A stretch of DNA of 64,000 bases from Octopus sinensis (GCF_006345805.1 NC_042998.1:122450001-122514000); one strand, 5' to 3'. Shown: positions 7,607-61,822, counted from the stretch's first letter. Notes: generated by a model not told the origin, from the sequence alone. Numbers and translations are program-made.

Positions 7607-10230
7607 AGTCATTTTAAATAAAAAATAAAAAAACAGTAAGGTTGGCCCTTTGTCATTTGATGATGAGGAATCAGTTGTTTAATCAACAGAATTACCTGAT
7701 CCTGAGTTAAACTGTAAGTGGCTAAGTATTCCATGGACACAGATACCCTTAATGCAATTCTCAGACAGAATCAGCAGCATGATACAGTATGTAACAAGGT
7801 ATGGGCCAAGATTGTACCATTTGGCTATACTGTGCCAACAGCATAGGCAGTAAAATGAAATATTTCTAAATTGGGAATCCAAAATTTTATTACAGATTTG
7901 GTGTAGTAGCAGATTAACTTTTAGTCAACAGCAAAAACATGCCTAATTTTATTTGAAATAAAATTAATCTTGTCATTTTTATCAAAATTAAATCATAAAA
8001 CTAAAATCAATCGAGCTAGCTCCCTTTTCAAAACAATAACTCCCATGGAAAAAAAAAAGAAAAAGATAAACTAACAAAAATAAGCATGTATACAAATATG
8101 CTGCTGCAGTATTGGAACAGTAATAACAGATAGATGGAATCATGGAATAGAAGACAGATGACATAAAGATAAACATATTTTGTCTTCCAGAAGCTAATTC
8201 TTTTTACTCAGTGTCATAAGATGTAATAAAGTAAACAAATATTGTATTATTCACGTTGTATTATGGCACTTACATCAAATCGAGTTACTTCTGTTGATGA
8301 CAGAGATTAGCAGAGATGTCATAAAACACTACTGATTGACATTCTATCATTTAGGAAGCTGCTATGATGGAATTATCAGTTGGGAAACAGAAGGAATTCT
8401 TTCTTCTATTTGTGATGATTAATAATTTCTCTCACAACGATATAAAACAATCTCAATCTGCAACTGGCAGAAACTGTAGTCTCCATTAGCATATGAGTGT
8501 GAATAAAACTAGTAACATTTATATAATACTACAAAGGTATTTAAGTGAGTGCCTGAACCAACTATGGGAATGGAACAAGTCACTAAAATTGATGAATATA
8601 TGAATGCATGTTAGTGATAAAATTGTGTAAGAACAAAGGAAATATATTGAATTATATAGCAAGCTGTCAAATTATATATGATAAAAAGAATATCACTTGC
8701 AGGGCAATAATTGCAAGAATATTTATAATATCTTTCATTTCTAAGGTTTTAGATGATGGATGACTAATAAAACGAAATTATGTAGTTATACACGATGATC
8801 CACACATAGACATACACATTAGCATAAACAGTTAACATGTGAATATAATGAATAGTAAAACACTATATCTTTATAAATACAAACAGGAGATTGCAAAAGA
8901 AAACAAAGTGAGAAACATGATCTGAGTTACATCAACGAATTCCTGAATGATTGAGTTACCAATTACATCTCTGAGAGTATTTCTTCGAGATTAGATACAC
9001 TTTTATAAATGTATCTGCAAGTAAGTGCATATGTGTGTGCATGGAAAAAGCTTTCCTTTTAAACATGTAGTAATAAAAATAAAGATTTCATACCAATACA
9101 AGACCACATAAGATTATTATCTATTACATTGACTCCAGCTCTTCACTGGTACTTAGGGTTACCAACATCCAGAAGGATTACAAATAAAGTTGGCCTTGGC
9201 AGGATAGGAACCCAAAATGTTAGGGCATTTAACCAAACATTGCAAATTTTTTCCAAGTGTGTATTATTAAAATACTGTTTGTGCTCAAATTTTAGTTTAT
9301 TTTTATATAAAAAATTCATATTTCCTTATTAGATGTTATTGTTGGGTTGTTCAGGGTAACTAGGTTGAAGGAAAGTGACTGTGTTCTTTACATGAATGAC
9401 CAAAGTGTACAAGTGAATTATATCAGGAAGCTTATTTGCTGGCTTGTATGTGGCATTTAAAGCTTTATAATGTTCCAGTTAACACTGTTACATGATATAT
9501 GTAAATAGTTATTACAAAATGGAATAAGGTGGTAATTATATAAAAAGATGTTCACATGTGTATAGATATGCATGCATTTTGACATTACAGAACAAAGTTC
9601 ATCACTCTTTGCCAAACATGGTATACAAAGTTACACAAAAACAAGAAGAAAGTGTGAACACATTTCTTAGAATTAAACAACAGAATTCTGTGTAGTGTCT
9701 ATGGTGGCTGTATTTGAGATTGCAATATTCCAGTTTTTTATAACCTTGAACAAAACTTCTAGAACCTTTGGAAATACAACAGGCATGAATTTACTCAACT
9801 TTTCATTTGTCTACTGCTCTTAATTGCTAAACAGTCAGATGGCCTTCATTTCCTTTTTTTCAAAAAGTGCTATTGTTCAGTGTTATTATGTGTCTTGCAT
9901 AGCCTAGATTAAAGATTGGTTGAATGCTTCAATAGGTTCAAGATTGTTTAGTAAAGACAAAGTTTGAAGATAAGAAAGAAATGCAGAGTATTTGGCATGT
10001 CAGCAAGGGGAATATTTTAGAAAGTTGTTAAGGAGGAAATGGCAGCATCTATAAGCCTTCATTTTACAAGGCCTTTGAGACTGGTTAGAACAAATGATTG
10101 AAGTAATCCTCAAACTGGAGACTTGTCTTCAATGCTTGCAACAGAGTGAATTCTACTAAAGGCACCAACTGACTTGGTGGATTGATGGATTAGTCTACCA
10201 TCTTAGAATTCAGAATGCAAAGAGACAGAT

Positions 10231-13090: not shown

Positions 13091-15826
13091 CTTAAAATTT
13101 AAGGAGGCCATGAGGTTATGTATTATTCTTATTCTTTTTTTTTTTTGTTTGGGGGCCCGGTAGATAGACACAAGCCCTTCCTTGTCTCTCTGAACCCTAG
13201 ATCAATGTACTGGCTGAATCCCACTCTCAAGAGCCCTGGACATATTTGCAACTTATTATCCAACTCCACAAGCCACAAAATTTAATAACTTTTTCTTATT
13301 CATCTTGGTATTGGTGGAAAGCCTGATTAAAAATTGGTGAGTGTTTCTATTCATAATGTAGTTTCCATGTATATCTCAAACATTTAAATCAGAAACTGTC
13401 TTTAATGAATTAACTATAGCTTATTTCAAGTATTAAGTATTTCCTGTCATTTCCACATGAGCAAACAAGCTTATAAGGAAGCAATAACTATCAAACAAAA
13501 CTTCTAATCAGTTTCTAGCTGTGGACATCCAATCTTTCCTTTGGAATATGCTGTTCAAATATGTAAGTCTTAAAACATGTGTACCTTACTTCAGCGACAA
13601 AATTTACAAGGGGAATTTGGCTGTTATATTGAGTGATTAAATAGAAACTCCCTCATTTACATAGACCAGCAGACAATGCAGAGACAGTATAGTTCAAGGC
13701 TCAATGTATTTTCAGCTATCTTAGTTCTGAGTTGAATTTACACAGAAGTGATCTTGGCTTGCAATTGTTAAATGATCAATAAAATAGGCACTAGTTATAT
13801 ATATATATTGTCAGTATTTCATATATCCAAAAAACAAAAAAACAAAAAAAAAAGAAGCATTAGTAAAGTAATATATTTTTAAAGAAGTTAAATGTTATGG
13901 CTAATGGCTATCATAGAGTGACCATTGGTTTTGCAGTAATCTTTATTATAAATGGCAATATCTGTCTGTCCGTTTGTCTGTTACCATCTCGATGCCCAAA
14001 CCAGCAAACCAATCTTCAACAAACTTTGTGTAAATGTTGAACTAACATCCTGTTCAATTACAGGTTAATTGGATTTAAAAAAAAAATCGATAATGGATCA
14101 TCTACAGGGGTTGGGCTATTACATGATAAAATGAGTGGGGTGCAATAGTGTTAGGTTTAGGAAAATGTGGCATAATGAGGGTGCCTGACATCAGGGAGGG
14201 GAAGAGACAGGAAGAGATAGACAGATAGAGAGAATGACAGACAGGGAAAGAGTGGGAGAGACAGAATTTTAATACTTTGTTCTTTCATTTCTTCCTATCA
14301 CTTAATGCATACACTTCAGTGAATTAACTGTCATATACTCAGTCAATACTTTTACAATATGTCCAGCAACAGATGTTAAACAAGTGAAAGGTAAAGTGAT
14401 TTTATACTTGTTTAAGATTTTATGATTAAGATTTATTAAAATTTACCAACGTACTCAAACAATACACTACATATAACGTCTTTCCTTTTCTTCCATAGAT
14501 AAATAGCCCCTCGTTTTCCATATATATAAAAGAGAGTTTGTATGTGTGTTTGTGTGTGCATATCTTCCTTATGCATTTGAAAAGTGAGGTGCTGATTTGA
14601 CATACTGGTTTGAGAAAAATAAGTTATATTTTAGTCTTTTACTCCACACAATTGGAATTATGTTTAATTAAAATAACTCTATATCAGATCTTAATTTTGG
14701 TGACAAGTTGGTAGATAGAGTCTACTAATAATAGTTTTGTAGCACTAGTGTTATTTTTTAAAATTTTAATTTATTTGGTGATTAATAAAATAATTACTAT
14801 CAATACTAGCACCTGTAACTTTCTAGACTCAACTCTATAACAAAAATTATCGTATCTGTAAAAAGAAACAATATTAGATAGAGCTTAATTAAAATCATTA
14901 AAAGTTTTAAAAGTTCATTATAGGATTTTTAAATATTTTTCTCTGTCAATTATGGTTATCGCCATAAAATAATTAATTCTTCTCATATATTTTGTGAAGA
15001 TATTGTAGTAATTAATAAGAAAAAAAACAGTTATTTTGTATTTTCAAGAATCTAGGATTGGTAAAAAAATTCAACTTTTAGTCAATAAAATTTGAATAAA
15101 CATTTTAAAATCTTGAAATGAAAAAGAAAGAATAGTACAGACTCTAAAGAAAAACCAGAATTTTAATACACATACCTATATTAGTATTTAGAATGTTAGT
15201 ATTAATACAGCATTGCAGTCAGAATTGCAGCTAGCTGAATTAATGGTTTTATGGGCCCACACTAAACATGAGATATGACTCATGCTGTATTCATCTCCTT
15301 AGTTGTGAATATGTATCAGATTTATCATGCGACTCACCATAAAAATATGGTTTACTTTATAATTGACAAATGGTTTGTTTTGCTGTTTAAATCCTTCCTT
15401 GAATATAGTTTGGAAAATAATAGGAGCTATTGATTTTCATTAGATAAACTACAAAAACTAATCCCCTGGGTAATGTTGTATCCTTTTGACTGAATCTGTT
15501 TTGAAACTTCCACTGTGTATGTTTATATTGGATTTATACAAGGGAAATGTGTTAAATACAACCATTTTGATTTATAATATGAGCTGTATTAGTCTTCTTA
15601 TGACTGCTTTTGGCTTAAGGGACATGTCATGTGCAAGTATGGTAAAATCAGGAATTTGAGGAAATTGATGAACTGTGTTGGTAAGAGTTAGTCCATGGTG
15701 TGAATACTAAAGTTTTGGGCCTTGCTATTTGTTGTGTGAAAGTAGAACACCCCAATTTGGTTGGCTCCTAATGGACTGTGCCACAATATAAATGGACATG
15801 CGCAGAGAGAGAGAGAGAGTTGGCGA

Positions 15827-17501
15827 CCTTGAACTGTGTTGTTCAGTGTTGAATCAGTTATTGTTGCGGATAGGTTATCCTTTGTTGAAGGTCCTCCCTA
15901 GTGGGGTTACCTATTGTTGGAACTGTTAAACCATTGTTGATTGATTGTTGTATTCCTTGCTTTTGCTATCAATTTCTCCAGTGGGGGCGAAAATAGCAGT
16001 AAGCTATGGAAGTGACGCTTCAGTAGCAGGTTGTGAGAATATAGCTGTTAACCAGCTGGAAGTGAAGGAAGTACCTGTGGATTTAGAAATATTAAAAAGC
16101 AGCAAGGAATTAATTCAAAGAGAGAGGTCAAGGCTAAAATTGACCACCTCGGAAGATGTAACAAGAAAGAAAAATAAAAAGATAATGATGTATATAACCC
16201 TATCACGTACAAGCAAGAAAATAGAGATAGCTAGTGAAGAAGCAATAGAAGAGTGCTTGGAAGAAATAAAGAGCGACATTAAATTTTTCTGCTGAGGGAG
16301 AAAATTCGGCACAGTGGAGGTGCACTTTCCTACCATAGAGGAGGCAGTAAAACACTCCCCTACAGCATCGAGAACGGAAGAATGGGCACTTACTTCTTCC
16401 AACCTATCTCGGTAAACGAATGGCAAGAGTGAGGATTGACAGGGTGCCCCCCGAGATTGCCGAGATGTGGCTACTTGCAGTAACCTTAACAGGGACAAAA
16501 GAGGATCCAGGAGTGCTGCAGGTAAGTCGGACAAAGCAAATGAACTGGTGGGATATGACATGGAAGTTATAATCCAGGCCACCTCACTGGACTTACAAGA
16601 AATTGTAGAAGAAATAGAGCTACCAGAAGTGAAGCTGCGAGTGGTGGTGGAGGGAAAACCTATCTGCTTCGACTGCAGAAAGAGGGGGCACATAAAGGCG
16701 AGCTGCCCCTTTTTAACAACCAGATACCAGCGGAGGAAAAGCAAGAAGAGAACAACAACAAAGAAGATAGAGGAAACTATGGAAGAATCAAATGTAGAAA
16801 GCAGAGACGAGGGATTCCAGGAGATACAAAATAGAAAGAGGAAGGACCTAAAAAATTCCACCCCCGCCGAAGAATCCGAACAAAAAGAAAAAGAAAGAAG
16901 TAGCATACAAGCACCCACACAGTCTACCACACCGCCGCAAACACCCAAGAAAACCACAGACATCCCAGAATCTCCAGATAAGCATACACTAGTAGAAGCA
17001 CATATAGATACACAAGCAGGCACACAAACATCACAGGCCAGTCATAGAAGTAGGGCACATCTGACGAACTATATGACAGGCATAGCCAATGAAAAAAATT
17101 GCAAAGATCAAATCGATAAGAGTTGAACTGCCTGAAGAATGGTGCGTACCGGGCATGAAATGCATATTAATAGACATGAACAATCATAATAAATTAAAAG
17201 GAATTTTTGGGAATGACTTAGACCCACCAGGACGGGAGTTGAGATATGATTACCTCCCGCGGTGGAATCTGAACATTTGAGACAGTATATGATCTAATAC
17301 GGTAATTACAATTTGATAAACATTAGTGTAAAAAATAGTTAAATGGTACTACTCGAGAGTGGGGCTCAAGTAGCCATTACACCCTCATTCATTATATAAA
17401 TTCATTTCATTCATTCGTTTATGTTTTCTGACCCCACTTTGTGTTGTTTGTCTTTGTTCGTCCCCTCTGTGTTGGACCCACAGTGGCCAATAAAATGAAA
17501 A
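15827..17501 (+). mobile_element. ORF1-only retroelement, copy A (full length, decayed), inserted in the 5' LTR
   Basis: GRKFGTVEVHF (RRM-like), RVRIDRVPPEI..W and VVEGKPICFDCRKRGHIKASCP, then a charged linker, a short C-terminal ORF, a 3' hairpin and AATAAA. Flanked by agagagttgg(c/t)ga at 15814-15826 and 17502-17514. Confidence 0.75.
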
Positions 17502-17642
17502 AGAGAGTTGGTGAGCTGTGTAAGACCGAGGGTTGCGTATTGGCGAGTGTAATTACAAGTATTGTGTATCTTGATTTGAACGATTTGCGAGGATGCTATT
17601 TATTATCCTATTATATTGTACATCGAATGTGCAATACAATAG

Positions 17643-17655
17643 TGGCGACGAGGAT
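17643..17655 (+). promoter_or_regulatory. Primer-binding site, complementary to the tRNA-Ser(GCU) 3' end
   Basis: TGGCGACGAGGAT lies 1 nt after the 5' LTR end (ACAATA, 17636-17641). Confidence 0.85.
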
Positions 17656-17729
17656 TCGGACAGTATTGCCATTGATACAACAGTGGCATCGAGGTTTCGA
17701 GCAATATTGAAACTGAAAATAGTACCAAA

Positions 17730-18560
17730 ATGGAAGAGTTACTGAAAGCAGTCGTAAAACAACAAGAGCAGCAGCAGCAACTACAGAAGTTAACAGAGTT
17801 GTTACTGCAGTCGAGAAATACGATAGAATTATTTTCAGCAGACGGTGTTGCAAACTCCATCGAAGAATTTCAGTACAAACCGGATGAAGGAACTACCCTT
17901 ACCGCGTATTACAGACGATACGGAAACATATTCAGAGAGGAATGCAAAGGATGGTCTAGTGAAAGGAAGTAAGGTTCCTTTTTCGAAAACTCACACCTCC
18001 GGAACACAAAAGTTTTTGTAACTTTATTTTGCCGAGAAAGCCCGCGGAATTGTATTTTGATGAAACGATAAATATTCTGACTAATATTTTTAGAGAAAAA
18101 CGTTCGCTATTTAACATTCATTGGGAATGTTTAAATTTAAAGATGAGTCAGACGACTTTGTAACATATGCCAGTATTGTTAATAAAGCTTGGAGAATTAA
18201 CGCCAGATCTGTTCAAGTGCCCAATGTTCGTTAAAGGGCTTGTGGCAACAGAAGACGCGGAAATTAGAAAATGAACATTATCAAAGTTGAAGCAAGATGT
18301 TGAACTAACTTTGCAGAAAGTGGCTGAGGAATGCCAAGAAATAATAAATATTCAAGAAGATGCAAGAAAAATAGAAGATAATAATAATAATAATAGCGTA
18401 CAAACGTGTAAAGAAAGTATCGAAAGAAAAAAAGACAGATAAATCCAAAACGTGCTATGGTTGCGCAGACCTGCTTTTTAAGAAAGATTGCCCCTTTAAA
18501 GATCAAAAATGTTTTAAGTGCGGTAAAACTGGGCGCTTGTTGAAGAAAGATGTAAAAACT
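17730..18560 (+). pseudogene. gag: Mag/K02A2.6-like gag with two CCHC knuckles, disrupted
   Basis: MEELLKAVVKQQ...FSADGVANSIEEFQYKPDEG..., then CYGCAD..FKKDCP and CFKCGKTG, with several stops and frameshifts. Confidence 0.85.
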
Positions 18561-18599
18561 GAGAAACCGAAGAAAGTCAACTCAACAAAAATAAATTAT

Positions 18600-19845
18600 A
18601 CCATAGAAAACCGAAAATTTGTGTCGGTAAAAATAAATGGTTTGCAGAAGAAAATGCAATTAGATACCGGTTCAGATGTATCGATAATTAATACGGCAAC
18701 ATGGATTAAGATAGGAAGGCCGGCATAAAAAAAAACAACAAACTACTAAGATAGATCACGGTGTGACGGAAGAAGTGGTTTAATTCTTGGGCGAAATTTC
18801 GCCAGAAATAAAACTTAAAGAAATGACGTGGAAAAGTAAAATAATGGTATCTAAAAATACAATGAATCTGTTCGGGACAGATTTAATGAAAGAATTCCAC
18901 CTGTGGGATCTACCATTGAATACATTATGTAATAAGGTGAATGTGTCACATACCGTGTCAGATAATGCGTCGGAAAAATTAAAATTAAAGATGTACTCTG
19001 ATGTGTTCCCGAAGGAGCTCGGAACATGTAAAAAAAAAATCAAAGTAAAGTTCGAGTTGAAAGAAAATGCGATGCCGGTGTTCAAATCGAAAAGGAATGG
19101 GAGTTAAATCAAGTTGAGAAGGAACTAAAAAGGTTGGAAGACCTGGAGGTAATTGGAAAAGTAGACTACTCAGAGTGGGTGGCTCATACTGCATATATAA
19201 AAAAGAAAAACAACAAAATGAGAGGTCTAAATGATTGTTTAAAAAATTACAACTATCCGCTTCCAAGGCCAGAAGAAATATTTGCTAAGTGCAATGGTGG
19301 GAAAACTTTTTCCAAGCTGGATTTGTCAGAGGCCTACCTCCAATTACTGGTAGATGAGGAATGTGTTAAGGTATCAACAATTAATACCCATAAAGGTTTC
19401 TACCGTTTAAAAAAACTGCCATTTGGAGTTAAGGTCACACCGACAATATTTCAACAAATGATGGACACTATGTTAGCAGACTGCGAGTTTGCGGTCCCAT
19501 ACTTGGATGACATATTGATCAAAAGTGAATCGAGGGACCAGCATATTGAACCTATAAAAATGTTTTTAAAAGAATAAGCTACTATGGATTTTAGTGAAAA
19601 GAAACGCGAATTTTTTAAAACAAAAATGAAGTATTTGAGACAGATGATCGATGAAAACGGACCCTTCTAGGGTTGACGTGATAAAAAATATGTCTGCTCC
19701 CACTAACAAAAATATTACAAGCATTTTTAGGTCTGGTAAGTTATTACCAGCTGTACATACCTGAAATGTATGAGCTAAGAGCTCTGTTGAATAATTTGTT
19801 AAAGAAATACACTAAATGGGACTGTACAAACGAACAGCATTCTCT
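18600..19845 (+). pseudogene. pol: Gypsy pol (protease, RT, start of RNase H); the 3' part including integrase is deleted
   Basis: KMQLDTGSDVSIIN (protease); FSKLDLSEAYLQ, LPFGVK and YLDDILI (RT); LQAFLGL..YY (connection/RNase H start). Confidence 0.9.
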
Positions 19846-22446
19846 CTGGTACCGCCAAAGGAATTTTCGGAAAGTTTACAAAAAAGGACGGTCCTGTTAC
19901 AAAACGTTAAAATTATCCACAGGAAAAATTGAAACCGCGACAACTGAGAGTATAGAAAAAATACTAAAAAATATTAAACACCTGGCGACGTTTGTAACGA
20001 GAGGTCAGAAATTCGGAGTGGTAGAAGTCAGGTTCGCATCTGAGGAAGTAGCAGCAGAGCATGCAGTAGACGTGATTTATTACCCACAAGGGGCGAACAT
20101 AGAGGGGACAGTACAATCGGGGAAAAAAATAAAATAATGAAATATGTATAAATGTGGTGTAATGCCCCACCCGATCCCCGAAATCAGGTGGTTACATTTC
20201 GTCGTTTTTAATTACATTTTATAATGTTTTCAAAAGTAACAAATTCATTTTTCAGCATTTCGCAATACATTTCAAAATAGAATTTCAAAATACATTATCA
20301 ATTACAGAAAAAATTGTTTTCACAAATTCACATATAAAGCTTTCGCAATACATCTTTAAGATTTCAAAATACATTTGAAATAAACAAAAGTCTTTCCAAA
20401 TTCTCTCTTTTTTTTTTCTTATAATTTTAAATTAGCTCCATTACCTTTTTCAGGTCATTGTAGTTTTCCATTTCTCGTGGGTACCTTAGCAGTCGGCACT
20501 TCGTGTGTCTTGTTACGTTCATACCAGCGGCCTCGATAAACGCATCGGCGTTGTCTTCATGGACCAGTGCACCCGTTTCCTTCCACTCCGTGCCCATCCT
20601 GACCCATGAATATCCCTCCGTTTCACTTATTAGTTCCTCCATCTCCCCACAGTGTCTGTATTGAACCAATGTTCCGTAAAATTTGTATCTTCTATTTGAC
20701 CCTATGTTTTCTTTAGTTTTCTTCTTCGGACTTACTTCTTCTTTACCTTCCTCTCCCAGCTTTTCTCTTTCTCTCTTTTTGCTTTCCTTTTCTTTTTCCT
20801 TCTCTTGTCTGTCGTATGTTCTTTTCCTTTTTGTGTAGCAGCCTTTCCCTTCTCTTGATTCTGTTCCTTCCCTTGTTTTTTTCCTGTTTTTTCACTTTCC
20901 TTTATTTTACTTTCTTTTTCTTTCTCTATTACCTGTGACTTTTGTTCTTCTTCTATTAATTCCTTCTCTTTGCTTTCATTTTCCTTCTGTGTATTGTTAT
21001 TTCCTTTTACCGTTGTTTCCTTTTCCTTGCTTTCTTTCTCCTTTAGAGTATTGTTCCCTTCTTCGGGTTCTTTTTCTTTCTCTTTTTTGTTTTCCTCTGC
21101 TCTTTCACACTCCGCCACGTATTCGTAAAGCGGACATTCTTTTTTAATGTGACCTCTTGTCCCACATAAATAACAATTGGGTTTTCTCCCCTGTGATTAG
21201 GAATGACGAATGGGCTTTCCTGCTGAGGTACTGCGGGAAAAGAATGGTGAGAGTAAGGGTGGTTAAAATCCCACCCGAATACGACGAGACGTGGATTATG
21301 GCGGCAGTCTTATTCCACATAAAACAGAATCCGAAAATATTTAAGGCAACAAGAACTCAAAAGGTGAACTTTTGGGAATACGGGCTAGAAATGAAAATTC
21401 AAGCTACCCTGGAAGACCTGAATTCCATAACTGAAGAAATATTATTGCCCGAAGGAAACAAGTTGAATGTGGTGGTAGAGGGCAGGCCTTTGAAATGTTT
21501 TTTGTGTAGCGAAAGAGGACACATAAATGCGGACTGCCCCCGAAGCAAGGAAAAAGAGAGGGAGGAGAGTTCGACACAGAGAGAGGCAACAGTGGAAGAG
21601 TACGGAGAAGAAGCTGAAACAGTGGATACAGAGGGAGAAATTCGTGGAGGTGAAACCGCGGAAAAGAAAAAGTAGAAGGGGTTCTCCATCGGAGAAGCTG
21701 AAAAAGAAAAAAGAGGCGATGGGAAGTAATGGAGAAAAATTGGTGACAAGATAGACAGAAGAGGAAAGTTTGAAAGTGTCTCCTCTAAAAGTGAAGTTGA
21801 AGAGAGGTGAAGGAAAAAGGAATGAAGGAGGGAGTGAAAACCAGACGAAGAAGAGATGGTATTATGTAGAATACCAAAGGAATATACATATAGAAGCAGA
21901 GCTCCTGAAAATGAAGCCAGTGACATGGGTAAAATTACCTAAAGGTGAGGGTAACGATGGAACTAAAGCAATAATAATAGAACCGAATTGCTATGAGGAG
22001 TTTTAAAAAAAGGTGCGATTTGGGAAAGGTACGGTTTAAAGTCGAGTTTGAAAAGTTGGAACCAGTAATTGACTGGGATGACGTGATACCGTTAATAAAG
22101 GACTGTCTTTTAGATAGTCCTCAATCAATGGATAGCGAGTAATAAGACTTTTTATTGGAAAGACAATGCGTCAAGAATCCGATGTGGACCGTTGGAGGAT
22201 ATACAGATTGGCGACTTGCAATGGTATGTTACATGTTAATTAGTTATGTAAATACCCGATAATAATGGACTGTAAACAAGCTTAATGGTACTGCATGTGA
22301 TGAGGAGCGCATGCAGCCATTCATAATCTCGTTGTTATATAATCATCTCATTCATATTCGTTTTATGTATTGTCCCCTCTGTGGTGTCCTGTCTGTTCTT
22401 GTCGCCCTCCCTCTACTTTGAGCCCTTGTGGCCATAATAAAGAAAG
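19845..22446 (+). mobile_element. ORF1-only retroelement, copy B/C, interrupted by inverted copy E
   Basis: Removing 20078-21198 restores ...AAEHAVDVIRNDEWAFLLRYCGKRMVRVRV...EGRPLKCFLCSERGHINADCP. It ends in a hairpin and aataaagaaag just before the LTR remnant. Confidence 0.75.
20078..21192 (-). mobile_element. ORF1-only retroelement, copy E (5'-truncated, inverted)
   Basis: Begins at GRKPNCYLCGTRGHIKKECP, followed by a K/E-rich linker, a short ORF (20427-20669) and a hairpin, and ends at tgtgggtaata(aa). 6-bp TSD GTGATT at 20072-20077 and 21193-21198. Confidence 0.75.
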
Positions 22447-22459
22447 AGAGCTGTGTAAA

Positions 22460-24076
22460 TCCGCGTCGTTGTATTTGAGTGAGTTGAAGTGTGAGCACTG
22501 TAGTTGTTGGCCTGTTGTTCCCTGAATTGTTGCATTGTTGTTGAATTTGTTGGAATTTTTATTTGTCTTCCCGATTTGTGGGTGAAGTAGTGAGTGGTGG
22601 ACCGGTGCAGGTGGGCAGTTGTGCCGCAGTGACGGGCGTGGGCTGTCAGTGGAGCTACTGCGGGTTCGTAAAGTGGAAGTTGGGGACAGGAATTTCGAGA
22701 GGTGTAGCGACTTGTTGAAGAAGTTATTGAAAGTGCCGAGAAGGGAACTATTATCTGCGCAGCGTTGAACATGGCAGTGAGGAAGTTGGAGGTGACAGCG
22801 GTGCAGGTGGTCGGGGTGGGGGTGTTTGAGAGAGATGAAGAACTTTACCACGTTCTACACCGGAGGACGGAAGTTCGGCACGGTGGGAGTGTGCTTTGTA
22901 AGCGGCGGGGAAGTGCTCCATTGTGGCCTTGAGATCGGCTGAGCGAACACTGCTATCTGCTTACTGTGGCAAACGTGCGGCCAGAGTAAGGATAGGTAGA
23001 GTGACCCCTGAAATTGACGAGGCATGGCTGGTGGCAGCCATCCTCTACCATACAGAGGAAGATGCAGAAATTTTGAAAATGTCCAAAACTACGGAGGTGA
23101 ACTGGTGGGGATATGGGCTACAGGTAACAGTCCATATAAGCCTACCAGACCTCCATAAGATTGTGGAAGAGCTGATTTTGCCGGATGAGACTAGATTGAA
23201 GATAGTTGTGGAGGGTAGACTTCCAATATATTTTTTGTGTGGAGTAAGGGGACACATGAAGGCCAAGTCTCCCCAGAAACACGGAGAGGAAATAACAGAA
23301 AAAGAAATTCAAGAAGAGAGTACAGTCGTAGAGGAGGAGAAAATGGAGGAGCAATTTACGATGGTGAAAAGAAAAAAGAACTTAGAATCACCACCAAAAA
23401 GCCCCAAGGAGAAAAAAAGGAAAGACAAACGAAGAGGAGAACAAGAATGAAAAGAGAAAAAATGGAAAATCAAATGAAAAATCAAGTGATGTGCGAATGC
23501 ACGAACCGTCGCCTTCAGCAAGCAAGGAAGAAAGAGTACGAAAGAAGGAAGGAAACGAAAGAGATAGCGAAGTAGAGACAGAGCTATTTATGACGGACGA
23601 AGAGATACCTACAGAGAGAAACTGAAGAAGCCTCATAGTATATGAAAAAAGCGTCGAAATTGTTAAAATGAAAAATGTTATCAGAGTGAAAATGGCAAAC
23701 CATGAAGGAAAGAAGGGTGTGCTGTTGGATAGAGAAAGAGGGGAGAGGTTAGTAAAACTATTTAAAAAAAAATAAAGAGTTGAAATAACACTGTTTCAGT
23801 ATAGCTAAGACAAGCTGCCGCCTGTTGTAATTTTTGACGATATAGTACAGTATTTGTCGTAATTTTGTGTTAAAAAATGCAAGACTGTAAAGTAAGTCTG
23901 TAATTTAAAAAACAGTAAAATGAAACTACTTGCTTTAGGGGGCAAGTAAGCCATTTCATCCTCATTTTCATATTTATAATTCATACGATATATATTTATA
24001 TGTACCCAGTGTCTTGTTTTGTCTGTCCTTGTGTAGTCCTCTCTTTATAAAGGCCATGTGTCTAAATAAAAGAAAT
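22460..24076 (+). mobile_element. ORF1-only retroelement, copy D (full length, decayed), inserted in the 3' LTR
   Basis: GRKFGTVGV, GKRAARVRIGRVTPEI and VVEGRLPIYFLCGVRGHMKAKSP, with hairpin and AATAAA. Flanked by agag(c/t)tgtgtaaa at 22447-22459 and 24077-24089. Confidence 0.75.
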
Positions 24077-24231
24077 AGAGTTGTGTAAAGCTGAGGGTTG
24101 CATATTGTCGAGTGTAATTACAAGTATTGTGTATCTTGAGTAGGACTATTTGCGAGGACGTTATTTATCATCGTTATATCGTACATCGAAAGTGTGATAC
24201 AACACTATTCTTTTGAAAATATGAAATAAAA

Positions 24232-24445
24232 CAAATAAGGTGACGAGATGGCAGAATCGTTACCATGTTGGGTAAAATTTTGCAGCATTTTATCTGAGTT
24301 CAAATTTTACCAAGGTTGACTTTGCCTTTCATCCTCCTGGGGGTCAATAAAATAAGTACCAATTAAGCACTAAGGTCAATGTAAATGACATTCTCTTTCC
24401 CATTCCCTCTAGTTGCTGGCCTTGTGCCAAAATTTGAAACCAATA
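24232..24445 (+). mobile_element. SINE (family of 59280 and 61255)
   Basis: gatggcagaatcgtta...ctgagttcaaatt...gactttgcctttcatcct...aataagtacc...gctggccttgtgccaaaatttgaaaccaata. Confidence 0.7.
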
Positions 24446-25544
24446 TGGATTAGAGCAAAGTAGCATTGTTGCTGCTTTGGTTATAGTCTACAACAATTGA
24501 CATCCCAACTCTCTTATGAACCCCCTAGGTATAAACAGATTGATAAATGACCTGGATTATCAAAAAATATCAATAAGCATATAGAAGGGAAATATCTGAC
24601 CTTGTACTGACATGTGATATAAAAGGTTTATGTAGCTATCTTAATTTTGAGAGATGGTAGTAGAAAATATATGAGATATGGAAGTACTTGTTACTCATTG
24701 CCTCACCTCAAAATAACAGAATAGGCTACAGTAATACCAAATAAACACAAAAGAGGAAATCAAATTGACTTTTAAAACACAGCTGAGCCAACTAGATGAA
24801 ATGTTGCACGTTTTAGAATACAGAGAAAGAATCTTTATTCCAGACAACTATTGGCCATGTTAGTACAAAATTGATAAGGAAAATGTTGCTGGTGGTCAAA
24901 GTGAAAGTCAGGATAATGACAAGAAAGAGGAAGGAGTGGTTGATCATGATAATGATGATGATAATAAATATTCACACACTCACGTGCACACATGCACATG
25001 TACACATACATTCAGGCGCGCGTGCACACACAAAACCAACATTGGCCACTCATGTTTCCTCCTCAATACAAAGTGCATACATGTACACTCATTTGTTAAT
25101 ATGTTGGTTTCAAATTTTGGAACAAAGCCAGTAATTCTGGAGAAGTGTGATAAGGCAATTACATTGACCTCAGTGCTCAACTGGTATTTGTTGTATTGTC
25201 TCCAAAAGGATGAAAGGAAATGTTGATCCCAGCAGAATTTTAATTCTGAATGTAAAGATGAATGAAATGCCACTAAGCATTTTGCCTAGCCTGCAGACAA
25301 TTCTGCCAGCTTGCTACCTTATCATAAGCTAATATATTAACAAACTAATGTACTCCCAAACACTTAGTGCACGCTTTAAGATGCACAGTGTTAAAAAACA
25401 CAGTATACTTCAAAGCCAGGCAAAACAAATCCTCCCAACATGGCAGTACATGGGGATATGGTGGGTGTCCAGACTTATAATCATATGTGAACATGTTTGT
25501 GTAAATGCATGCATGTTTGCATGTGATAAGTTGGTGAGGCAAAC

Positions 25545-27437: not shown

Positions 27438-29460
27438 ATCATCATCATCATCATCATCATCATTTAGCGTCCGTTTTCCATGCTAGCATGGGTTGGACGG
27501 TTCTACTGGGGTCTGTGAAGCCAGAAGGCTTCATCAGGCCCAGTCAAATCTGGCAGTGTTTCTACGGCTGGATGCCCTTCCTAACACCAACCACTCCGTG
27601 AGTGTAGTGGGTGCTTTTTACGTGCCACCCGCACTGGTGCCAGACAGAGCTGGCAAACGGCCACGAACGGATGGTGCTTTTTATGTGCCACCGGCACGAG
27701 GGCCAGGCGAGGCTGGCAACGGACACGAAACGGGGCGGTGCTGGCAACGGTCGCGAAACGGAAAGTTCTCTTACATGCCACCGGCACTGGTAACACAATC
27801 TGCAATTTCCATTGATCGATTTCGATTCTGATCCTCACTTGCCTCAATGGGTCTTCACAAGCAGAGTTTCGACATGCCACCGGCACTGGTAGCACATCCG
27901 CAATTTCCATTGATCGATTTCGATTCTGATCCTCACTTGCCTCAACACGTCTTCACAAGTAGAGTTTTGTGTCCCAAGAAGGGAAGGTATGCATACGTAG
28001 GCTGGCTCCATCCCATGTAGAAGGCCACGGGTTTGTGGACTCACTTGTCCTGCCGGGTCTTCTCGCGCACAGCACACTTCCAGAGGTCTCGGTCTCTAGT
28101 CATTTCCTCAGTGAGACCTAAAGTTCGAAGGTCGTGCTTCACCACCTCGTCCCAGGTTTTCCTGGGTCTGCCTCTTCCACAGGTTCCCTCAACCGCTAGG
28201 GTGTGGCACTTTTTCACACAACTATCTTCATCCATTCTCGCCACATGACCATACCAGCGCAAACGTCTCTCTTGCACACCACAACTGATGCTTCTTAGGT
28301 CCAGCTTTTCTCTCAAGGTACTTACACTCTGCCGAGTGTGAGTACCGGCATTACACATCCATCGGAGCATACTGGCTTCATTTCTAGCGAGCTTACGCAT
28401 ATCCTCAGCAGTCACGGCCCATGTTTCACTGCCATGTAGCATGGCTGTTCGTCACACGCATCATACAGTCTGCCTTTCACTCTGTGCGAGAGGCCTTTTG
28501 TCACCAGCAGAGGTAAGAGCTCTCTGAACTTTGCCCAAGCTATTCTTACTCTAGCAGTTACACTTTCAGCACACACACCCACCCCCGCTGCTGACTTGGT
28601 CACCTAGGTAACGGAAACTATCAACTATTTCTAGTTTTTTCTCCCTGGAAAGTGACGGAAGTTGGTCTCAGAGCATTTTCAGTGTTTATTGTTCCTGAGC
28701 ATCTGCCACATACAAAAACCATCTTCCTAGTTAGCCTTCCTTTGACATTGCTGCATCTCTTATGTGTCCATAGCTTACACTTGGTGCATCTTATAGAGTT
28801 TCTACCTACACCTTTTCTACAGATCGAGCAGGGCCATCTACCTGAAGGTGTTGTGATTTGTCTACCTTCCTACTGATTACGACTTTTTTAGCTAGATTGA
28901 CTCTGAGGCCCTTCGATTCTAATCCTTGTTTCCACACCTGAAACTTCTCCTCCAGTTCTGATAGCGACTCAGCAATTAGAGCAAGGTCATCAGCATAGAG
29001 GAGCTCCCAAGGGCATCCTGTCTTGAATTCCTCCGTTATTGCCTGGAGGACTATGATAATAGGAGGGGGCTGAGTACTGAGCCTTGGTGGACCCCTACCT
29101 CTACCCGGAATTCTTCACTGTACTCATTTCCAACCCTCACCCTACTAGCGGCGTCCCTATACATGGCCCGCACAGCTCTCACTAACCATTCATCTATCCC
29201 TATTTTCTCATTGCCCACCAGATAAGGATCGGGGGACCCTGTCGAAGGCTTTCTCCATGTCAACAAAAGCCAGGTACAGGGGCTTATCTTTGGCTAGGTA
29301 TTTCTCCTGCAGCTGCCTTACCAGGAATATAGCATCAGTAGTACTTTTCCCTGGCACAAACCCAAACTGCATCTCATCTAAACTAACTCTCTCTCTAATT
29401 AGTTGGGCTATGACCCTCTCCGTAACCTTCATCACCTGGTCCAACAGCTTGATACCTCTA
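27438..29460 (-). mobile_element. 5'-truncated RTE-clade LINE (RT domain + 3' UTR + (GAT)n tail)
   Basis: QFGFVPGKSTTDAIF, FVDMEKAFDRVPR, LLYADDL, LHGSETW, RRLRWYGHV and GRGRPRKTW, split by frameshifts. Confidence 0.95.
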
Positions 29461-47524: not shown

Positions 47525-48378
47525 GTGCATATATAGATTATAAACAATGAAAGGCCGGTTTTGGTGATTCATTTGACAGAGGTAGTAGAGAACCAATTCG
47601 ATGATAAACCTGACCTTGGATCTTGAAAGTTTTCATGAAACCTGGCTCAGTTAAATCTCTTGTGGCTCCAAATGATGTCAACTGTAGTGCAGCGTTGTAT
47701 TGTCTAATTTTGTTTTGGAAATGCTTGGTCAGTTGATGACAACAGTTTTGTTCAATTGCAGGGAGTTTAACCTTTCCACCACTGTAGCACAGTGCAGGTG
47801 ACTTTCCAGTCCACTTCCTTGCGTTATAATGTATGCACTCAGCTGTCATTGCACCAATGGAAACTCTAGTGTCATCTGCATAATGAACTACAGGAGCAAA
47901 ATTGAAAGCTGCTTCATAGAAGTTACTTCTCTGAGCTGTTGCAACTTCTCTTCGTACTGCAGTGGAGATCCTATTCCTTGTCAGCCGTGCATACCTCTGT
48001 TCATTAGTTTGTGATGTTCTGGCTTTTGTAGTGCACAGTTTGTTCGTCTCTTGGTATGCGTCCCTTTTTGCAGCTGTCTCTCTTTCCCTGGACAGAGACA
48101 TTCTTTTGGCTGACCTTGACATTGTAGACAAATTTGACACTTTCCTTCCAGGCATGGTTATATAGGTATACAAAAATACACGGGTGCTGTAGACAGTAAC
48201 AATGAAAATAACTGGGTAAACGAAATTATATTTCTTAATACGACGGCAGAAAGTAAATAAGAAATTTTTACGGAAAATAAGTGAAATTTGTGATTGAACC
48301 AAAGACCCAGTATCGAAGGAACCAGATAGAGAGATATAGATAGACAGCGATAGAGAGGTATAGATAGAGAGATATAGA
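47525..48378 (-). mobile_element. Helitron 5' fragment (Rep/Hel N-terminus)
   Basis: ORF 47538-48302 reads IGAMTAEC..YNARKW...LCYSGGKVKLP...IRQYNAALQLTSFGA...TFKIQGQVYHRIGSLLP. A putative A|TC 5' end lies at 48378. Confidence 0.9.
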
Positions 48379-59279: not shown

Positions 59280-59540
59280 TTGAGGAGAGGGAGAGTAGTC
59301 AATATCATTTACCTATTTCTTTATTACCCACAAGGGGCTAAACACACAGAGGACAAACAAGGACAGACAAACGGATTAAGTCGATTATATCGACCCCAGT
59401 GTGTAACTGGTACTTATTTAATCGACTCCGAAAGGATGAAAGGCAAAGTCGACCTCGGCGGAATTTGAACTCAGAACGTAGCGGCAGACGAAATACCACT
59501 GAGCATTTCGCCCGGCGTGCTAACGTTTCTGCCAGCTCGC
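59280..59540 (-). mobile_element. SINE whose 3' tail matches the ORF1-only element
   Basis: Head ggcggcgagctggcagaaacgttagcacg; tail ...gccccttgtgggtaataaagaaatag. Confidence 0.9.
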
Positions 59541-59789
59541 CGCCTTCTTATCATTTACCTCAATACTTTACTAACACTTTATTCTAACGACTCAAAGGGA
59601 TGAAAGGCAAAGCGGACAGGGGATATTTTAATACTGAGTGTAAACTGACGGAGCAAATGCATTTTCTGACGTCTTAATGACGTTTTAATAACATATTTTC
59701 TCTCTCGCTTCTCTGTTGCTCTAGTTGACTCAGCAGGCAAAAATGTGTTGTACCTGTTGTTGAATGGGTCAACTTTCTCACATTCGGTG

Positions 59790-61254: not shown

Positions 61255-61822
61255 AAGGCAGCGTGATGGCAGAAACGTTAGCACGCCGGACAAAATACAT
61301 AGCGGTATTTCGTCTGCTGCTGCGTTCTGAGTTCAAATTCCGCCGAGGTCGACTTTGCTTTTCATCCTTTCGGAGTCGATAAATAAGTACCAGTTACTGG
61401 GGTCGATATAATCGACTTAATCCGTTTGTCTGTCCATGTTCGTCCTCTCTGTGTGTAGCCCCTTGTGGGTAGTAAAGAAATAGGTAGTTCGTCTGCCGTT
61501 ACGTTCTGATTTCAAATTCCACCGAGGTCGACTTTGCCTTTCATCCTTTCGGGGTCGATTAAATAAGTACCAGTTACGCACTGAGGTCGATATAATCTAA
61601 TTAATCCATTTGTCTGTCCTTGTTCGTCCCCTCTGTGTGTAGCCCCTTGTGAGTAGTAAAGAAATAGGTATTTCGTCCATCTTTACCTTCTGAGTTCAAA
61701 TTTCGCCGGGCTTGGCTTTACTTTTCATCCTTCTGGGGTCGATAAAATAAGTACCAGTCAAATACTGGAGTCGATTATATGGTCTTACCAGCTTTCCTCG
61801 AAATTGCTGGCCTTGTGCCAAA
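61255..61822 (+). mobile_element. Head-to-tail SINE multimer (about three bodies)
   Basis: Repeated ctgagttcaaattcc.ccgaggtcgactttgc...ccccttgtg.gtagtaaagaaataggta units. Confidence 0.9.

What the first reader, a model, noticed from the sequence alone, without database searches (positions are those of the whole stretch)
15730..24204. A Gypsy element whose two LTRs are parasitised at the same site by an RT-less, ORF1-only retroelement family
Seen: one TSD-bounded Gypsy insertion contains four divergent copies (roughly 40-50% amino-acid identity by eye) of a ~1.6-1.7 kb element with no RT, endonuclease or integrase. Copy A (5' LTR) and copy D (3' LTR) each have their own 13-bp, one-mismatch direct repeats. 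Copies A, B/C and D all end within ~15 bp of the same gagctgtgtaa LTR motif. Removing A leaves a normal ~224-bp LTR. Known: Tx1-clade LINEs can be target-specific, including for other transposons; HAL1 elements encode only ORF1; HeT-A forms gag-only head-to-tail arrays. Inference: this is a site-specific, non-autonomous hyperparasite of LTR retrotransposons that I cannot match to a described cephalopod family.
Basis: partly seen in the sequence, partly recalled or inferred. Interest (0 to 1): 0.88.

Follow-up and report, generated by a model that had tools for sequence, protein, structure and literature searches.

The report
ORF1-only LINE copies nested in Gypsy
An old, broken octopus Gypsy retrotransposon has been hit four times by a "half-LINE" that keeps only the first LINE gene and must borrow its copying enzyme; this is a cephalopod counterpart of mammalian HAL1, interesting to transposon specialists but built from known parts.

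Summary
A Ty3/Gypsy copy bounded by a 5-bp duplication (CTATT, 15730-24204) carries four divergent copies (44-56% aa) of a ~1.65-kb element that encodes one CCHC-knuckle protein and no RT, endonuclease or integrase.

External octopus loci identify this protein. It is ORF1 of an L1/Tx1-type LINE. In O. vulgaris the same ORF1 family is followed by a 1132-aa APE+RT+zinc-knuckle ORF2, and the same ~70-nt 3' tail is shared by the full LINE, the ORF1-only copies and an octopus SINE. ORF1-only copies also occur alone or in head-to-tail arrays in O. vulgaris, O. sinensis and O. bimaculoides. The lineage is therefore a HAL1-like non-autonomous LINE.

A related Gypsy copy has short (143-155 bp) LINE-free LTRs, and A and D differ more than the LTR remnants do. 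The units are therefore insertions, not a native long LTR.

A, D and C end within 8 bp of each other at the predicted U3/R boundary. D and C use the same position, with a duplication sandwiched between them. However, the 3' LTR is only a 124-bp remnant, and ORF1-only copies elsewhere sit at non-LTR sites. LTR-specific "hyperparasitism" is not shown. Tx1 families that prefer LTR elements are already described.

The parts
15725..15729 (.). Left copy of the 5-bp target-site duplication (CTATT) of the Gypsy element
   Evidence: The same pentamer is at 24205-24209. The related element L007 also has a 5-bp duplication (ATAAG).
15730..15829 (+). 5' LTR, U3 part. It begins TGTTGTGT, has TATAAAT at 15787-15793 and (GA)n at 15804-15819. 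It ends with the upstream copy of LINE A's duplication (TTGGCGACCT, 15820-15829).
   Evidence: The LTR start motif and the TATA position match the L007 LTR.
15830..17507 (+). Unit A: full-length ORF1-only LINE derivative (1678 bp). It has a TTGTTG-rich 5' UTR, a degraded ORF1 (~15996-17280), a 3' UTR with a G-rich-loop hairpin (~17350-17375), and a conserved 3' tail ending AATAAAATGAAAAAGAGAG.
   Evidence: No ORF2.
17508..17641 (+). Downstream duplication copy (TTGGTGAGCT, 17508-17517) followed by the R-U5 part of the 5' LTR (17518-17641)
   Evidence: 84.8% identical to 24081-24204
17643..17660 (+). Primer-binding site, complementary to a tRNA 3' end with a T-loop-like GGATTCG motif. A degenerate second copy is at ~17685-17702.
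   Evidence: The same motif follows the L007 5' LTR.
17730..19865 (+). Gypsy internal region: gag (DUF7083, two CCHC knuckles), protease (LDTGSD), and RT up to the thumb. There are many stops and frameshifts. RNase H, integrase and polypurine tract are absent.
   Evidence: 78-80% nt identity to L007.
19866..20071 (+). Unit C, 5' piece. ORF1 from about residue 70, so the unit is 5'-truncated. It is joined directly to Gypsy RT sequence.
20072..21197 (-). Unit B: 5'-truncated ORF1-only copy in reverse orientation, running from the CCHC knuckle to the 3' tail (..GGGTAATAAATCAC). It is inserted into C's ORF1.
   Evidence: (40-nt tail match, 92.5%)
21198..22450 (+). Unit C, remainder: ORF1 core, CCHC knuckle, C-terminal domain, 3' UTR hairpin, and tail ending AATAAAGAAAGAGAG
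22451..22459 (+). CTGTGTAAA: upstream duplication copy of D, sandwiched between C and D
   Evidence: For the pattern of tandem insertions sandwiching a duplication, see PMC4494074.
22460..24080 (+). Unit D: ORF1-only copy (1621 bp) with a long 5' UTR, a shortened N-terminus, a degraded ORF1, a hairpin, and a tail ending AAAAGAAATAGAG
   Evidence: (71% nt to the O. sinensis copy in L005)
24081..24204 (+). 3' LTR remnant, R-U5 only. It begins with the duplication copy TTGTGTAAA and ends ACAACA.
24205..24209 (.). Right copy of the Gypsy duplication (CTATT)

Best explanation
The locus is an old Ty3/Gypsy insertion. Its LTR remnants are 85% identical (JC distance 0.17). It was later hit four times by different members of an ORF1-only, non-autonomous lineage derived from octopod L1/Tx1-type LINEs.

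Each unit consists of a 5' UTR, ORF1 and a 3' UTR. ORF1 has an N-terminal region, a ferredoxin-like/RRM-like core, a CCHC knuckle, a K/E-rich linker and a small C-terminal domain. The 3' UTR has a G-loop hairpin and a conserved ~70-nt tail. The units lack ORF2. They must therefore be copied in trans by the APE endonuclease and RT of full-length relatives that carry the same tail. The octopus SINE that shares this tail would be copied the same way (inferred).

Proposed order of events, all by target-primed reverse transcription (inferred):
1. A entered the 5' LTR between the (GA)n run and TTGGCGACCT, about 30 nt after the TATA box, and made a 10-bp duplication.
2. D entered the 3' LTR 8 bp further on (GAG|CTGTGTAAA) and made a 9-bp duplication.
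3. C then used the regenerated copy of that same target upstream of D. It was 5'-truncated, and a ~2-3 kb deletion accompanied or followed it. The deletion removed the LTR's U3 and the 3' half of pol.
4. B inserted backwards into C.

All three LTR junctions place the LINE tail (...GAGAG) against a target GAG. This suggests annealing of the RNA 3' end plus a Tx1-like endonuclease preference. The result would be a local hot spot and tandem growth, not exclusive LTR targeting.
For: ORF1 identity of the units:
- A profile of A, C and D finds 437 protein clusters. The named ones are from Octopus bimaculoides, O. vulgaris, O. sinensis and Argonauta hians.
- In O. vulgaris locus L002 the family's ORF1 is followed directly by a 1132-aa ORF2 with Exo_endo_phos, RVT_1 and zf-RVT domains. 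The best PDB match is human L1 ORF2p, E=2e-71.

Shared 3' tail:
- The full LINE, units A-D, the copies in L003, L005 and L006, and SINE copies in the window all share the tail.

ORF1-only architecture elsewhere:
- It recurs without assembly gaps in L003, L005 and L006 copies 1 and 2. ORF2 searches find no related ORF2 there or in the window.
- A, C and D cluster with these copies, apart from the ORF1 of full-length elements (crude NJ tree).

Insertion rather than native LTR:
- Flanking repeats of A and D.
- A versus D are 50% aa identical. Their 3' 170 nt are 68.5% identical, against 84.8% for the adjacent LTR remnant (Fisher p=0.0015).
- The related Gypsy L007 (78-80% nt) has 143-155-bp LTRs, a polypurine tract, the same primer-binding site, a 5-bp duplication and no LINE.

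Tandem behaviour of the family:
- L006 is a heterogeneous head-to-tail array.
- L002 holds three 5.28-kb copies sandwiching a ~9-nt target-like sequence.

Precedent:
- The Tx1 clade is often target-specific, including for LTR elements. Tandem copies sandwiching a duplication are read as sequential insertion (PMC4494074).
Against: - A ~2-3 kb deletion that removes exactly the 3' LTR's U3 and the downstream pol has to be postulated for C.
- Three of four insertions within 8 bp of one motif in one element is stronger clustering than a weak preference would predict. I could not survey a genome to measure the preference.
- The first ~45 nt of D's 5' UTR and of the LTR R-U5 resemble each other weakly beyond the 9-bp duplication (z=2.1-2.5). 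This is unexplained.
- LTR homology between the window and L007 rests on short shared motifs and is not significant by shuffling (z=0.9-1.6).
- Trans-mobilisation and the role of the hairpin are inferred, not shown. Hairpin stability z-scores are modest.
Confidence: 0.58

Rival explanations
1. The ORF1-only family is a strictly site-specific 'hyperparasite' that homes to the U3/R boundary of this Gypsy family's LTRs. It may use the LTR promoter for its own transcription and read-through or target homology for precise integration.
For: - A, C and D all end within 8 bp of each other at the predicted transcription start of the LTR. C and D end at the identical position.
- All three have the same orientation as the Gypsy.
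- The autonomous relatives are L1/Tx1-type. Tx1 families targeting LTR retrotransposons exist, and transcription from the target has been proposed for such elements (PMC4494074).
Against: - The closest sampled relative of D (L005, O. sinensis) is in non-LTR DNA with its own imperfect duplications. So are L003, the L006 array and unit B.
- The related Gypsy L007 has empty LTRs.
- All LTR-associated junctions come from a single locus, so they are not independent evidence.
Confidence: 0.2
2. The mosaic was made before integration, as one chimeric cDNA inside a Gypsy particle.

The proposed path is as follows. The tRNA-primed strong-stop DNA (U5-R) jumped end-to-end onto the 3' end of a co-packaged ORF1-only LINE RNA (D). 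It then jumped to a second LINE RNA (C). It then switched into the Gypsy RNA within RT and ran to the RNA's 5' end. It jumped to a third LINE RNA (A), and finally to the 3' R/U3. Plus-strand priming at the polypurine tract fixed the left end at U3, and integrase made the 5-bp duplication.
For: A single event explains several features:
- A differs from D.
- There is only one U3.
- RNase H, integrase and polypurine tract are missing.
- LINE tails abut the predicted first bases of R. The TATA box at 15787-15793 predicts a start near 15818-15823.
- The 5'-most unit of the C-D pair is the truncated one, as in L006.
- The whole is bounded by an integrase-type duplication.

End-to-end template jumping is known for retroelement RTs (own knowledge: R2 RT, Bibillo & Eickbush).
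Against: - It needs four or five rare switches and three different LINE RNAs in one particle.
- It does not explain the 9-bp repeat flanking D, which a target-site duplication explains simply.
- Completion of a double-stranded, integration-competent end without a normal second jump is speculative.
- There is no precedent I can cite.
Confidence: 0.12
3. Native long LTR. The Gypsy family captured the ORF1 unit in its LTR, and both LTRs carried it at integration.
For: The direct repeat between the two ends extends beyond the 124-bp LTR part into the unit's 3' end (17329-17639 vs 23906-24202, 71.7%).
Against: - Both LTRs are identical at integration, yet A and D are only ~50% aa identical, against 85% nt for the LTR remnant.
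- That extended similarity is the LINE tail, which is conserved family-wide.
- The related Gypsy has short LINE-free LTRs.
- The units occur without any Gypsy in L003, L005 and L006.
Confidence: 0.03
4. Post-insertion rearrangement. Ectopic recombination or gene conversion between this Gypsy and other LINE-bearing copies, plus deletions, assembled the present order.
For: The element is old and heavily degraded. One large deletion is needed in any case.
Against: The matching 5-bp duplication at both outer ends argues against inter-element recombination. No donor copies were seen.
Confidence: 0.05

Closest known systems
HAL1 ('half-L1') of mammals
   Same: A non-autonomous LINE derivative that keeps the 5' UTR, ORF1 and 3' end and has lost ORF2. 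It propagates as a lineage of its own using a partner's ORF2p (PMC5753468).
   Different: - It derives from an L1/Tx1-type LINE of octopods, not from mammalian L1.
- Its ORF1 is a CCHC-knuckle type with no coiled-coil/CTD architecture.
- Its tail is a specific ~70-nt sequence shared with a SINE, not a poly(A) tail.
- It forms head-to-tail arrays.
Target-preferring Tx1-clade LINEs and their dependants (Tx1L in Tx1D; Kibi in (TC)n; Tx1-8_Crp and Tx1-4_AMi in LTR retrotransposons; SINEU-3 tandem copies)
   Same: - L1-like APE+RT ORF2 in the autonomous relatives.
- Insertion into another transposon.
- Tandem copies sandwiching a duplication.
- A GA/TC-rich junction (PMC4494074).
   Different: - Tx1-clade membership of the octopus RT was not tested by phylogeny here.
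- The copies in the window are ORF1-only.
- Sampled copies elsewhere are not in LTRs, so specificity is unproven.
HeT-A of Drosophila telomeres (own knowledge)
   Same: A gag/ORF1-only non-LTR element that depends on an RT supplied in trans and forms head-to-tail arrays.
   Different: HeT-A is Jockey-clade and is added to chromosome ends. It has no endonuclease-type duplications. It is domesticated for telomere maintenance.
LINE/SINE pairs with a shared 3' tail (stringent-type recognition)
   Same: A ~70-nt tail and an upstream stem-loop are shared between the autonomous LINE, the ORF1-only elements and a SINE.
   Different: The dependent element here still encodes a protein. It is 1.6-1.9 kb long, not 200-300 bp.

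Membership tests
L1/Tx1-group non-LTR retrotransposon (for the family the units derive from) | Autonomous members encode ORF2 with an N-terminal APE endonuclease, an RT and a C-terminal zinc knuckle | tested here: met
   L002 ORF2 (1132 aa) has Exo_endo_phos E=2e-15, RVT_1 E=8e-31 and zf-RVT E=5e-9. Human L1 ORF2p matches at E=2e-71 over residues 3-868. L004 has the same arrangement.
L1/Tx1-group non-LTR retrotransposon (for the family the units derive from) | RT phylogeny places the element inside the Tx1 clade | not tested
   No reference RT set was available. There is only indirect support: L1-Tx1 families are annotated in O. vulgaris and coleoids (PMC13282606, PMC8967140).
L1/Tx1-group non-LTR retrotransposon (for the family the units derive from) | ORF1 with an RRM-type domain plus a CCHC knuckle (type I ORF1p) | tested here: inconclusive
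   The CCHC knuckle is present (Pfam zf-CCHC, E=5e-5 in P0009, weaker in window copies). The AF2 core (residues ~40-140) has pLDDT 80-91 and a beta-alpha-beta-beta-alpha-beta fold. Foldseek finds only generic ferredoxin-like domains, best E=3e-3.
HAL1-like ORF1-only non-autonomous LINE | Encodes ORF1 but no ORF2, with the LINE 5' and 3' ends retained | tested here: met
   Units A and D are complete from 5' UTR to tail with no ORF2 similarity. The same holds for L003, L005 and L006 copies 1 and 2.
HAL1-like ORF1-only non-autonomous LINE | Propagated as its own lineage: several copies share the deletion, and ORFs are intact in some | tested here: met
   At least 8 ORF1-only copies in 4 loci and 3 species, 25-59% aa apart. 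ORF1s of 379-453 aa are intact (P0080, P0009, P0032, P0003).
HAL1-like ORF1-only non-autonomous LINE | Insertion hallmarks of target-primed reverse transcription: duplications and 5' truncation | tested here: met
   Duplications of A (10 bp), D (9 bp), L003 (~17 bp, imperfect) and L005 (~12 bp, imperfect). 5' truncation of B, C and L006 copy 1.
HAL1-like ORF1-only non-autonomous LINE | Descent from mammalian L1 (HAL1 in the strict sense) | tested here: not met
   The host is an octopod, ORF1 is a CCHC type, and there is no poly(A) tail. It is an analogue of HAL1, not a member.
Ty3/Gypsy LTR retrotransposon (host element) | LTRs with TG..CA ends, a 4-6 bp duplication, a primer-binding site after the 5' LTR, and gag-PR-RT order | tested here: met
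   The relative L007 has complete short LTRs, a polypurine tract, the same primer-binding site and an rve integrase.
Ty3/Gypsy LTR retrotransposon (host element) | RNase H, integrase, polypurine tract and a complete 3' LTR | tested here: not met
   All are absent from the window copy. pol ends at ~19865 and the 3' LTR lacks U3. This is a deleted remnant.
Target-specific Tx1-type element (LTR-targeting) | The same target sequence flanks a large share of copies (>20% in PMC4494074) | not testable with these tools
   No cephalopod genome can be searched by DNA here. Of the 7 ORF1-only copies with a readable 3' flank, 3 abut this LTR motif, and all 3 are in this one locus. The other 4 abut unrelated sequence or another LINE.

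The most novel reading that the evidence does not exclude
The ORF1-only lineage really homes to the first bases of R in Gypsy LTRs and to the equivalent 5' end of its own copies. It would exploit three parties at once: the LTR promoter for transcription, a full-length L1/Tx1 LINE for endonuclease and RT, and its own ORF1p for packaging.

Alternatively, the mosaic was stitched together by template jumps inside a Gypsy particle. That would be direct evidence of LINE RNA co-packaging and recombination with an LTR element.
Probability: 0.25. Interest if true: 0.65.

Novelty: new member of a known kind. Interest (0 to 1): 0.4.

Why it matters
It shows that octopod genomes hold a diversified, partly intact lineage of protein-coding but RT-less LINE derivatives. 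This lineage, a SINE and full-length L1/Tx1 elements all share one 3' tail. This three-tier system (autonomous LINE, half-LINE, SINE) would allow study of what ORF1p contributes to trans-mobilisation outside mammals. It may also matter for repeat annotation in cephalopods: public protein sets name these ORFs only 'CCHC-type domain-containing' or uncharacterized proteins. The clustered hits at the U3/R boundary of one Gypsy give a concrete, cheaply testable hypothesis about target choice by Tx1-like machinery.

Tried and rejected
1. Rejected. The ~70 nt I took for U3 is the LINE tail, conserved in a full-length LINE and in SINEs. The motif I took for a primer-binding site (AGTGGGGG..) sits just before the ORF1 start codon in other copies.

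2. Homology of LTR parts with unit ends or leaders by shuffling tests. Only weak, z=1.2-3.2.

3. The first k-mer protein search with unit C found nothing. The alignment-based search was swamped by the K/E-rich linker and gave 5 hits.

4. Six look-ups of family proteins found no contig.

5. The idea that the L001 copy also sits in a Gypsy LTR. No significant similarity, z<1. An assembly gap hides its 3' side.

6. Significance of the window-L007 LTR alignment. Not significant, so only shared motifs are claimed.

7. RNAalifold on the 3' UTR hairpin predicted no pairs because of poor alignment. Single-sequence folds show the hairpin with modest z-scores.

8. Foldseek against PDB gave no specific match for ORF1p.

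9. Rfam search of the window found no family.

10. ARAGORN found no tRNA gene to match the primer-binding site.

11. A metagenome scan for the SINE/LINE tail found nothing.

12. Literature searches found no description of ORF1-only octopus elements.


Full report
WHAT IS THERE

Window 15730-24204 is one LTR-retrotransposon insertion. It starts TGTTGT and ends ACAACA. It is flanked by CTATT at 15725-15729 and at 24205-24209. A tRNA-type primer-binding site (TGGCGACGAGGATTCGG) lies two bases after position 17641. Behind it lie gag (Pfam DUF7083, E=4e-16, two CCHC knuckles), a protease motif and RVT_1 (E=1.5e-16). The reading frames are full of stops. pol ends inside RT at about 19865. RNase H, integrase and polypurine tract are missing.

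Four copies of a second element lie inside this frame:
- A, 15830-17507, plus strand.
- C, ~19866-20071 plus ~21198-22450, plus strand, 5'-truncated.
- B, 20072-~21197, minus strand, 5'-truncated, sitting inside C.
- D, 22460-24080, plus strand.

tblastn finds these copies nowhere else in the 64 kb. Their conserved core is 44-56% identical in protein.

A is flanked by AGAGAGTTGGCGACCT and AGAGAGTTGGTGAGCT. D is flanked by (AGAG)CTGTGTAAA and (AGAG)TTGTGTAAA. In both cases the AGAG part belongs to the element's own tail. The true duplications are therefore 10 bp (8 of 10 matches) and 9 bp (8 of 9 matches).

The only LTR-to-LTR similarity that is not LINE sequence is 17518-17641 versus 24081-24204 (84.8%). 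The 3' LTR therefore has no U3. In LTR coordinates the 3' junctions of A and D are 8 bp apart. C ends at exactly the D position.

WHAT THE UNITS ARE

Pfam sees only a weak zinc knuckle in the units. A profile built from A, C and D and run against 1.8 billion representative proteins finds 437 clusters, 118 of them at E<=1e-10. Nearly all are short or medium-sized proteins. None of the 150 listed hits looks like an ORF1-RT fusion. Only two exceed 1000 aa, and both match by repeated short knuckle stretches; I did not inspect them. The named ones are 'CCHC-type domain-containing' or uncharacterized proteins of Octopus bimaculoides, O. vulgaris, O. sinensis and Argonauta hians. Full-length members are 379-453 aa.

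The genomic context settles the identity. In O. vulgaris locus L002, a member of the family (P0040) is followed directly by an intact 1132-aa ORF2. That ORF2 has an APE endonuclease, an RT and a C-terminal zinc-binding domain. Its best solved relative is human L1 ORF2p (E=2e-71). L004 (O. sinensis) has the same ORF1+ORF2 arrangement. The protein is therefore ORF1 of an L1/Tx1-type LINE. L1-Tx1 families are annotated as recently active in O. vulgaris and are among the ancient coleoid repeats (PMC13282606, PMC8967140).

The last ~70 nt of the L002 LINE (..TTGTCCCCTCTTTGTTGGCCCCTTGTGGGTAAATAAA..) align with several other sequences. They align with the ends of A, B, C and D, with the ends of the copies in L003, L005 and L006, and with the ends of SINE copies in the window (59313-59393 minus strand, 61403-61483, 61587-61667). 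It also refutes my own early idea that those 70 nt were LTR U3 sequence.

Upstream of the tail, most copies can form a hairpin with a G-rich loop and differing stem sequences. The thermodynamic support is modest, and A, L003 and L006 copy 2 fold no better than shuffled sequence.

The AlphaFold model of P0009 gives a confident beta-alpha-beta-beta-alpha-beta core (pLDDT 80-91). Foldseek finds only generic ferredoxin-like domains, so an RRM is plausible but unproven.

THE UNITS ARE ORF1-ONLY, AND THAT IS A LINEAGE TRAIT

A full ORF2 query finds nothing in the window. In A, C and D the ORF1 stop is followed within 230-300 nt by the hairpin and tail.

The same architecture is seen without assembly gaps in three other places:
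- L003 (O. vulgaris), with an intact 379-aa ORF1.
- L005 (O. sinensis), in an intron of a Wtap-like gene model. It is 71% nt identical to D.
- L006 copies 1 and 2 (O. bimaculoides).

In a crude NJ tree of the core domain, A, C and D group with L001, L005, L006 and P0006, away from the ORF1 of the two full-length LINEs. L003 lies elsewhere. This is the HAL1 situation in a different LINE group and phylum. HAL1 is a non-autonomous L1 derivative that encodes only ORF1p and arose several times (PMC5753468).

Mobilisation in trans by tail-sharing full-length LINEs is inferred from the shared tail. It is not shown.

INSERTIONS OR NATIVE LONG LTR?

Three points argue for insertion.

1. Both LTRs of an element are identical at integration. 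Here the LTR remnants are 84.8% identical, while the adjacent unit 3' ends are 68.5% identical (Fisher p=0.0015) and the ORFs are ~50% identical in protein.

2. A related Gypsy copy in O. bimaculoides (L007) shows what an uninterrupted LTR looks like. It was found through an RT fragment 78% identical in protein, and it is 78-80% nt identical over gag and RT. Its LTRs are 155 and 143 bp and 87% identical to each other. They start with the same TGTTGTGT and have a TATA box at a similar position. The element has a polypurine tract, an almost identical primer-binding site and a 5-bp duplication (ATAAG), and it carries no LINE.

3. The units exist without any Gypsy nearby (L003, L005, L006).

One caveat applies. 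The window and L007 LTRs are too diverged for a significant alignment (z=0.9-1.6). The claim of colinearity therefore rests on motifs only.

IS THE FAMILY SPECIFIC FOR THIS LTR SITE?

Within this locus the clustering is striking. All four copies lie in 8.5 of 64 kb (rough chance 0.002). Three of them have 3' junctions within 8 bp, at the place where the TATA box (15787-15793) predicts the start of R.

The family also tends to build arrays. L006 holds three head-to-tail ORF1-only copies of different subfamilies, the 5'-most truncated, with a direct tail-to-5'-UTR junction. L002 holds three 99-100% identical full-length copies at a 5.28-kb period. These sandwich a ~9-nt sequence that resembles the left flank (AACCCGACA, ACACTGATAA, ACACCCGATA).

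This matches what Kojima describes for Tx1-mobilised elements. Tandem copies sandwiching a duplication are read as sequential insertion into the same target. The Tx1 clade is often target-specific, and two crocodilian families prefer LTR retrotransposons (PMC4494074).

On the other hand, the copies elsewhere with readable flanks are not in LTRs:
- L003 has GCTGGGTTCG[T/G]CTA.. duplications in unique DNA.
- L005 sits next to a foldback repeat.
- The L006 array lies in non-Gypsy DNA.
- B sits in a LINE ORF.

All LTR-associated junctions come from this one locus. LTR specificity as a family trait is therefore not demonstrated. With these tools it cannot be tested, because no cephalopod genome can be searched by DNA and the contig look-ups are exhausted.

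HOW IT MOST LIKELY HAPPENED

The best-supported account has the following steps.
1. A complete Gypsy with two ~224-bp LTRs integrated. Going by the LTR distance of 0.17 and the scaling in PMC13282606, this was roughly 20-30 My ago (a rough estimate).
2. A entered the 5' LTR by target-primed reverse transcription.
3. D entered the 3' LTR 8 bp further along.
4. C used the regenerated target upstream of D. It was 5'-truncated and was accompanied or followed by a ~2-3 kb deletion.
5. B entered C backwards.

At each LTR junction the tail's terminal GAGAG meets a GAG in the target ((GA)n|TTGG; TGAG|CTGTG). This fits annealing of the RNA 3' end to the nicked target. Five of the six readable plus-strand flanks begin CTG, CTA or TTG. 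This may hint at an endonuclease preference, but the sample is far too small.

The steps that are shown are the identity of the parts, the junction sequences and the existence of autonomous relatives. The steps that are inferred are the order of events, the deletion, trans-mobilisation and the annealing.

A RIVAL WORTH KEEPING

The structure U3-A-[R-U5]-PBS-gag-PR-RT'-C'-D-[R-U5] is also what one chimeric minus-strand cDNA would look like. The Gypsy RT, on reaching RNA 5' ends, would have jumped onto the 3' ends of co-packaged LINE RNAs. That would explain the single U3, the missing pol 3' half and the exact abutment on R in one event. It needs many rare switches, and it leaves D's 9-bp flanking repeat unexplained. 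I give it about 0.12.

COMPARISON AND NOVELTY

In function the units are HAL1-like half-LINEs. In behaviour they resemble Tx1-type elements and their dependants (tandem growth, insertion into another transposon). The array habit and the gag-only coding recall HeT-A (own knowledge). They are not HAL1 in the strict sense: the LINE group is different, ORF1 is a CCHC type, and the tail is a specific sequence shared with a SINE.

I found no paper in the held library describing an ORF1-only LINE lineage in cephalopods. Repbase and Dfam could not be checked.

I rate it a new member of a known kind, with moderate interest. The 'site-specific hyperparasite of LTRs' claim is an attractive but untested extrapolation from one locus, and its concept already has precedents.

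Noticed in passing
window 59313-59545 (-), 61260-61485, 61486-61667, 61668-61840 (+): Copies of an octopus SINE whose last ~65 nt are the same tail as the L1/Tx1-type LINE and the ORF1-only units. Three partial units at 61260-61840 lie head to tail. Each new unit starts at the same internal position (..AAATAGG|TA(G/T)TTCGTC..).
   Followed up: partly
window 24230-24446, 25101-25223, 61689-61837: A second SINE-like repeat with the same body but a different tail (..TTGCTGGCCTTGTGCCAAAATTTGAAACCAATA). One copy lies directly downstream of the Gypsy.
   Followed up: no
L002 4445-19184 (O. vulgaris OX597840.1): Three tandem, 99-100% identical full-length L1/Tx1-type LINE copies (period 5278-5286 bp). 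ORF2 is intact (1132 aa) in copy 1 and ORF1 is nearly intact, so the element is possibly active. The junctions sandwich a ~9-nt sequence resembling the left flank. There is an internal A-run in the 5' UTR.
   Followed up: partly
window 17643-17660 and ~17685-17702; L007 9077-9094 and ~9133-9150: The primer-binding-site motif is duplicated about 40-55 nt downstream in both related Gypsy copies, so the duplication is a family feature of the leader.
   Followed up: no
window 28041-28442 (-): A 133-aa ORF (..SETWAVTAEDMRKL..RLRWYGHVARMDE..) that looks like the C-terminal end of a LINE RT (RTE-like by eye). It is unrelated to the finding.
   Followed up: no
window 47538-48302 (-); L001 16203-16772 (+): ORFs with a cysteine-rich N-terminal motif (..CY/CANGKV..F..TSFGA..) that look like Helitron-type helicase-like N-terminal regions.
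   Followed up: no
L005 8763-9175 and 11117-11325: A foldback/MITE-like repeat flanks the O. sinensis ORF1-only copy on both sides: 213 bp at 92.5% in direct orientation, plus inverted arms. Either the LINE landed in a duplicated MITE, or a long target duplication or rearrangement accompanied it.
   Followed up: partly
L001 13735-13917: A short RT/RNase H-junction-like fragment of an LTR retrotransposon (..LVYPKPDVPLCLLINAFDSGIG) lies about 2.7 kb downstream of the O. bimaculoides ORF1-only copy, beyond an assembly gap. Whether that copy also sits in an LTR element could not be decided.
   Followed up: partly
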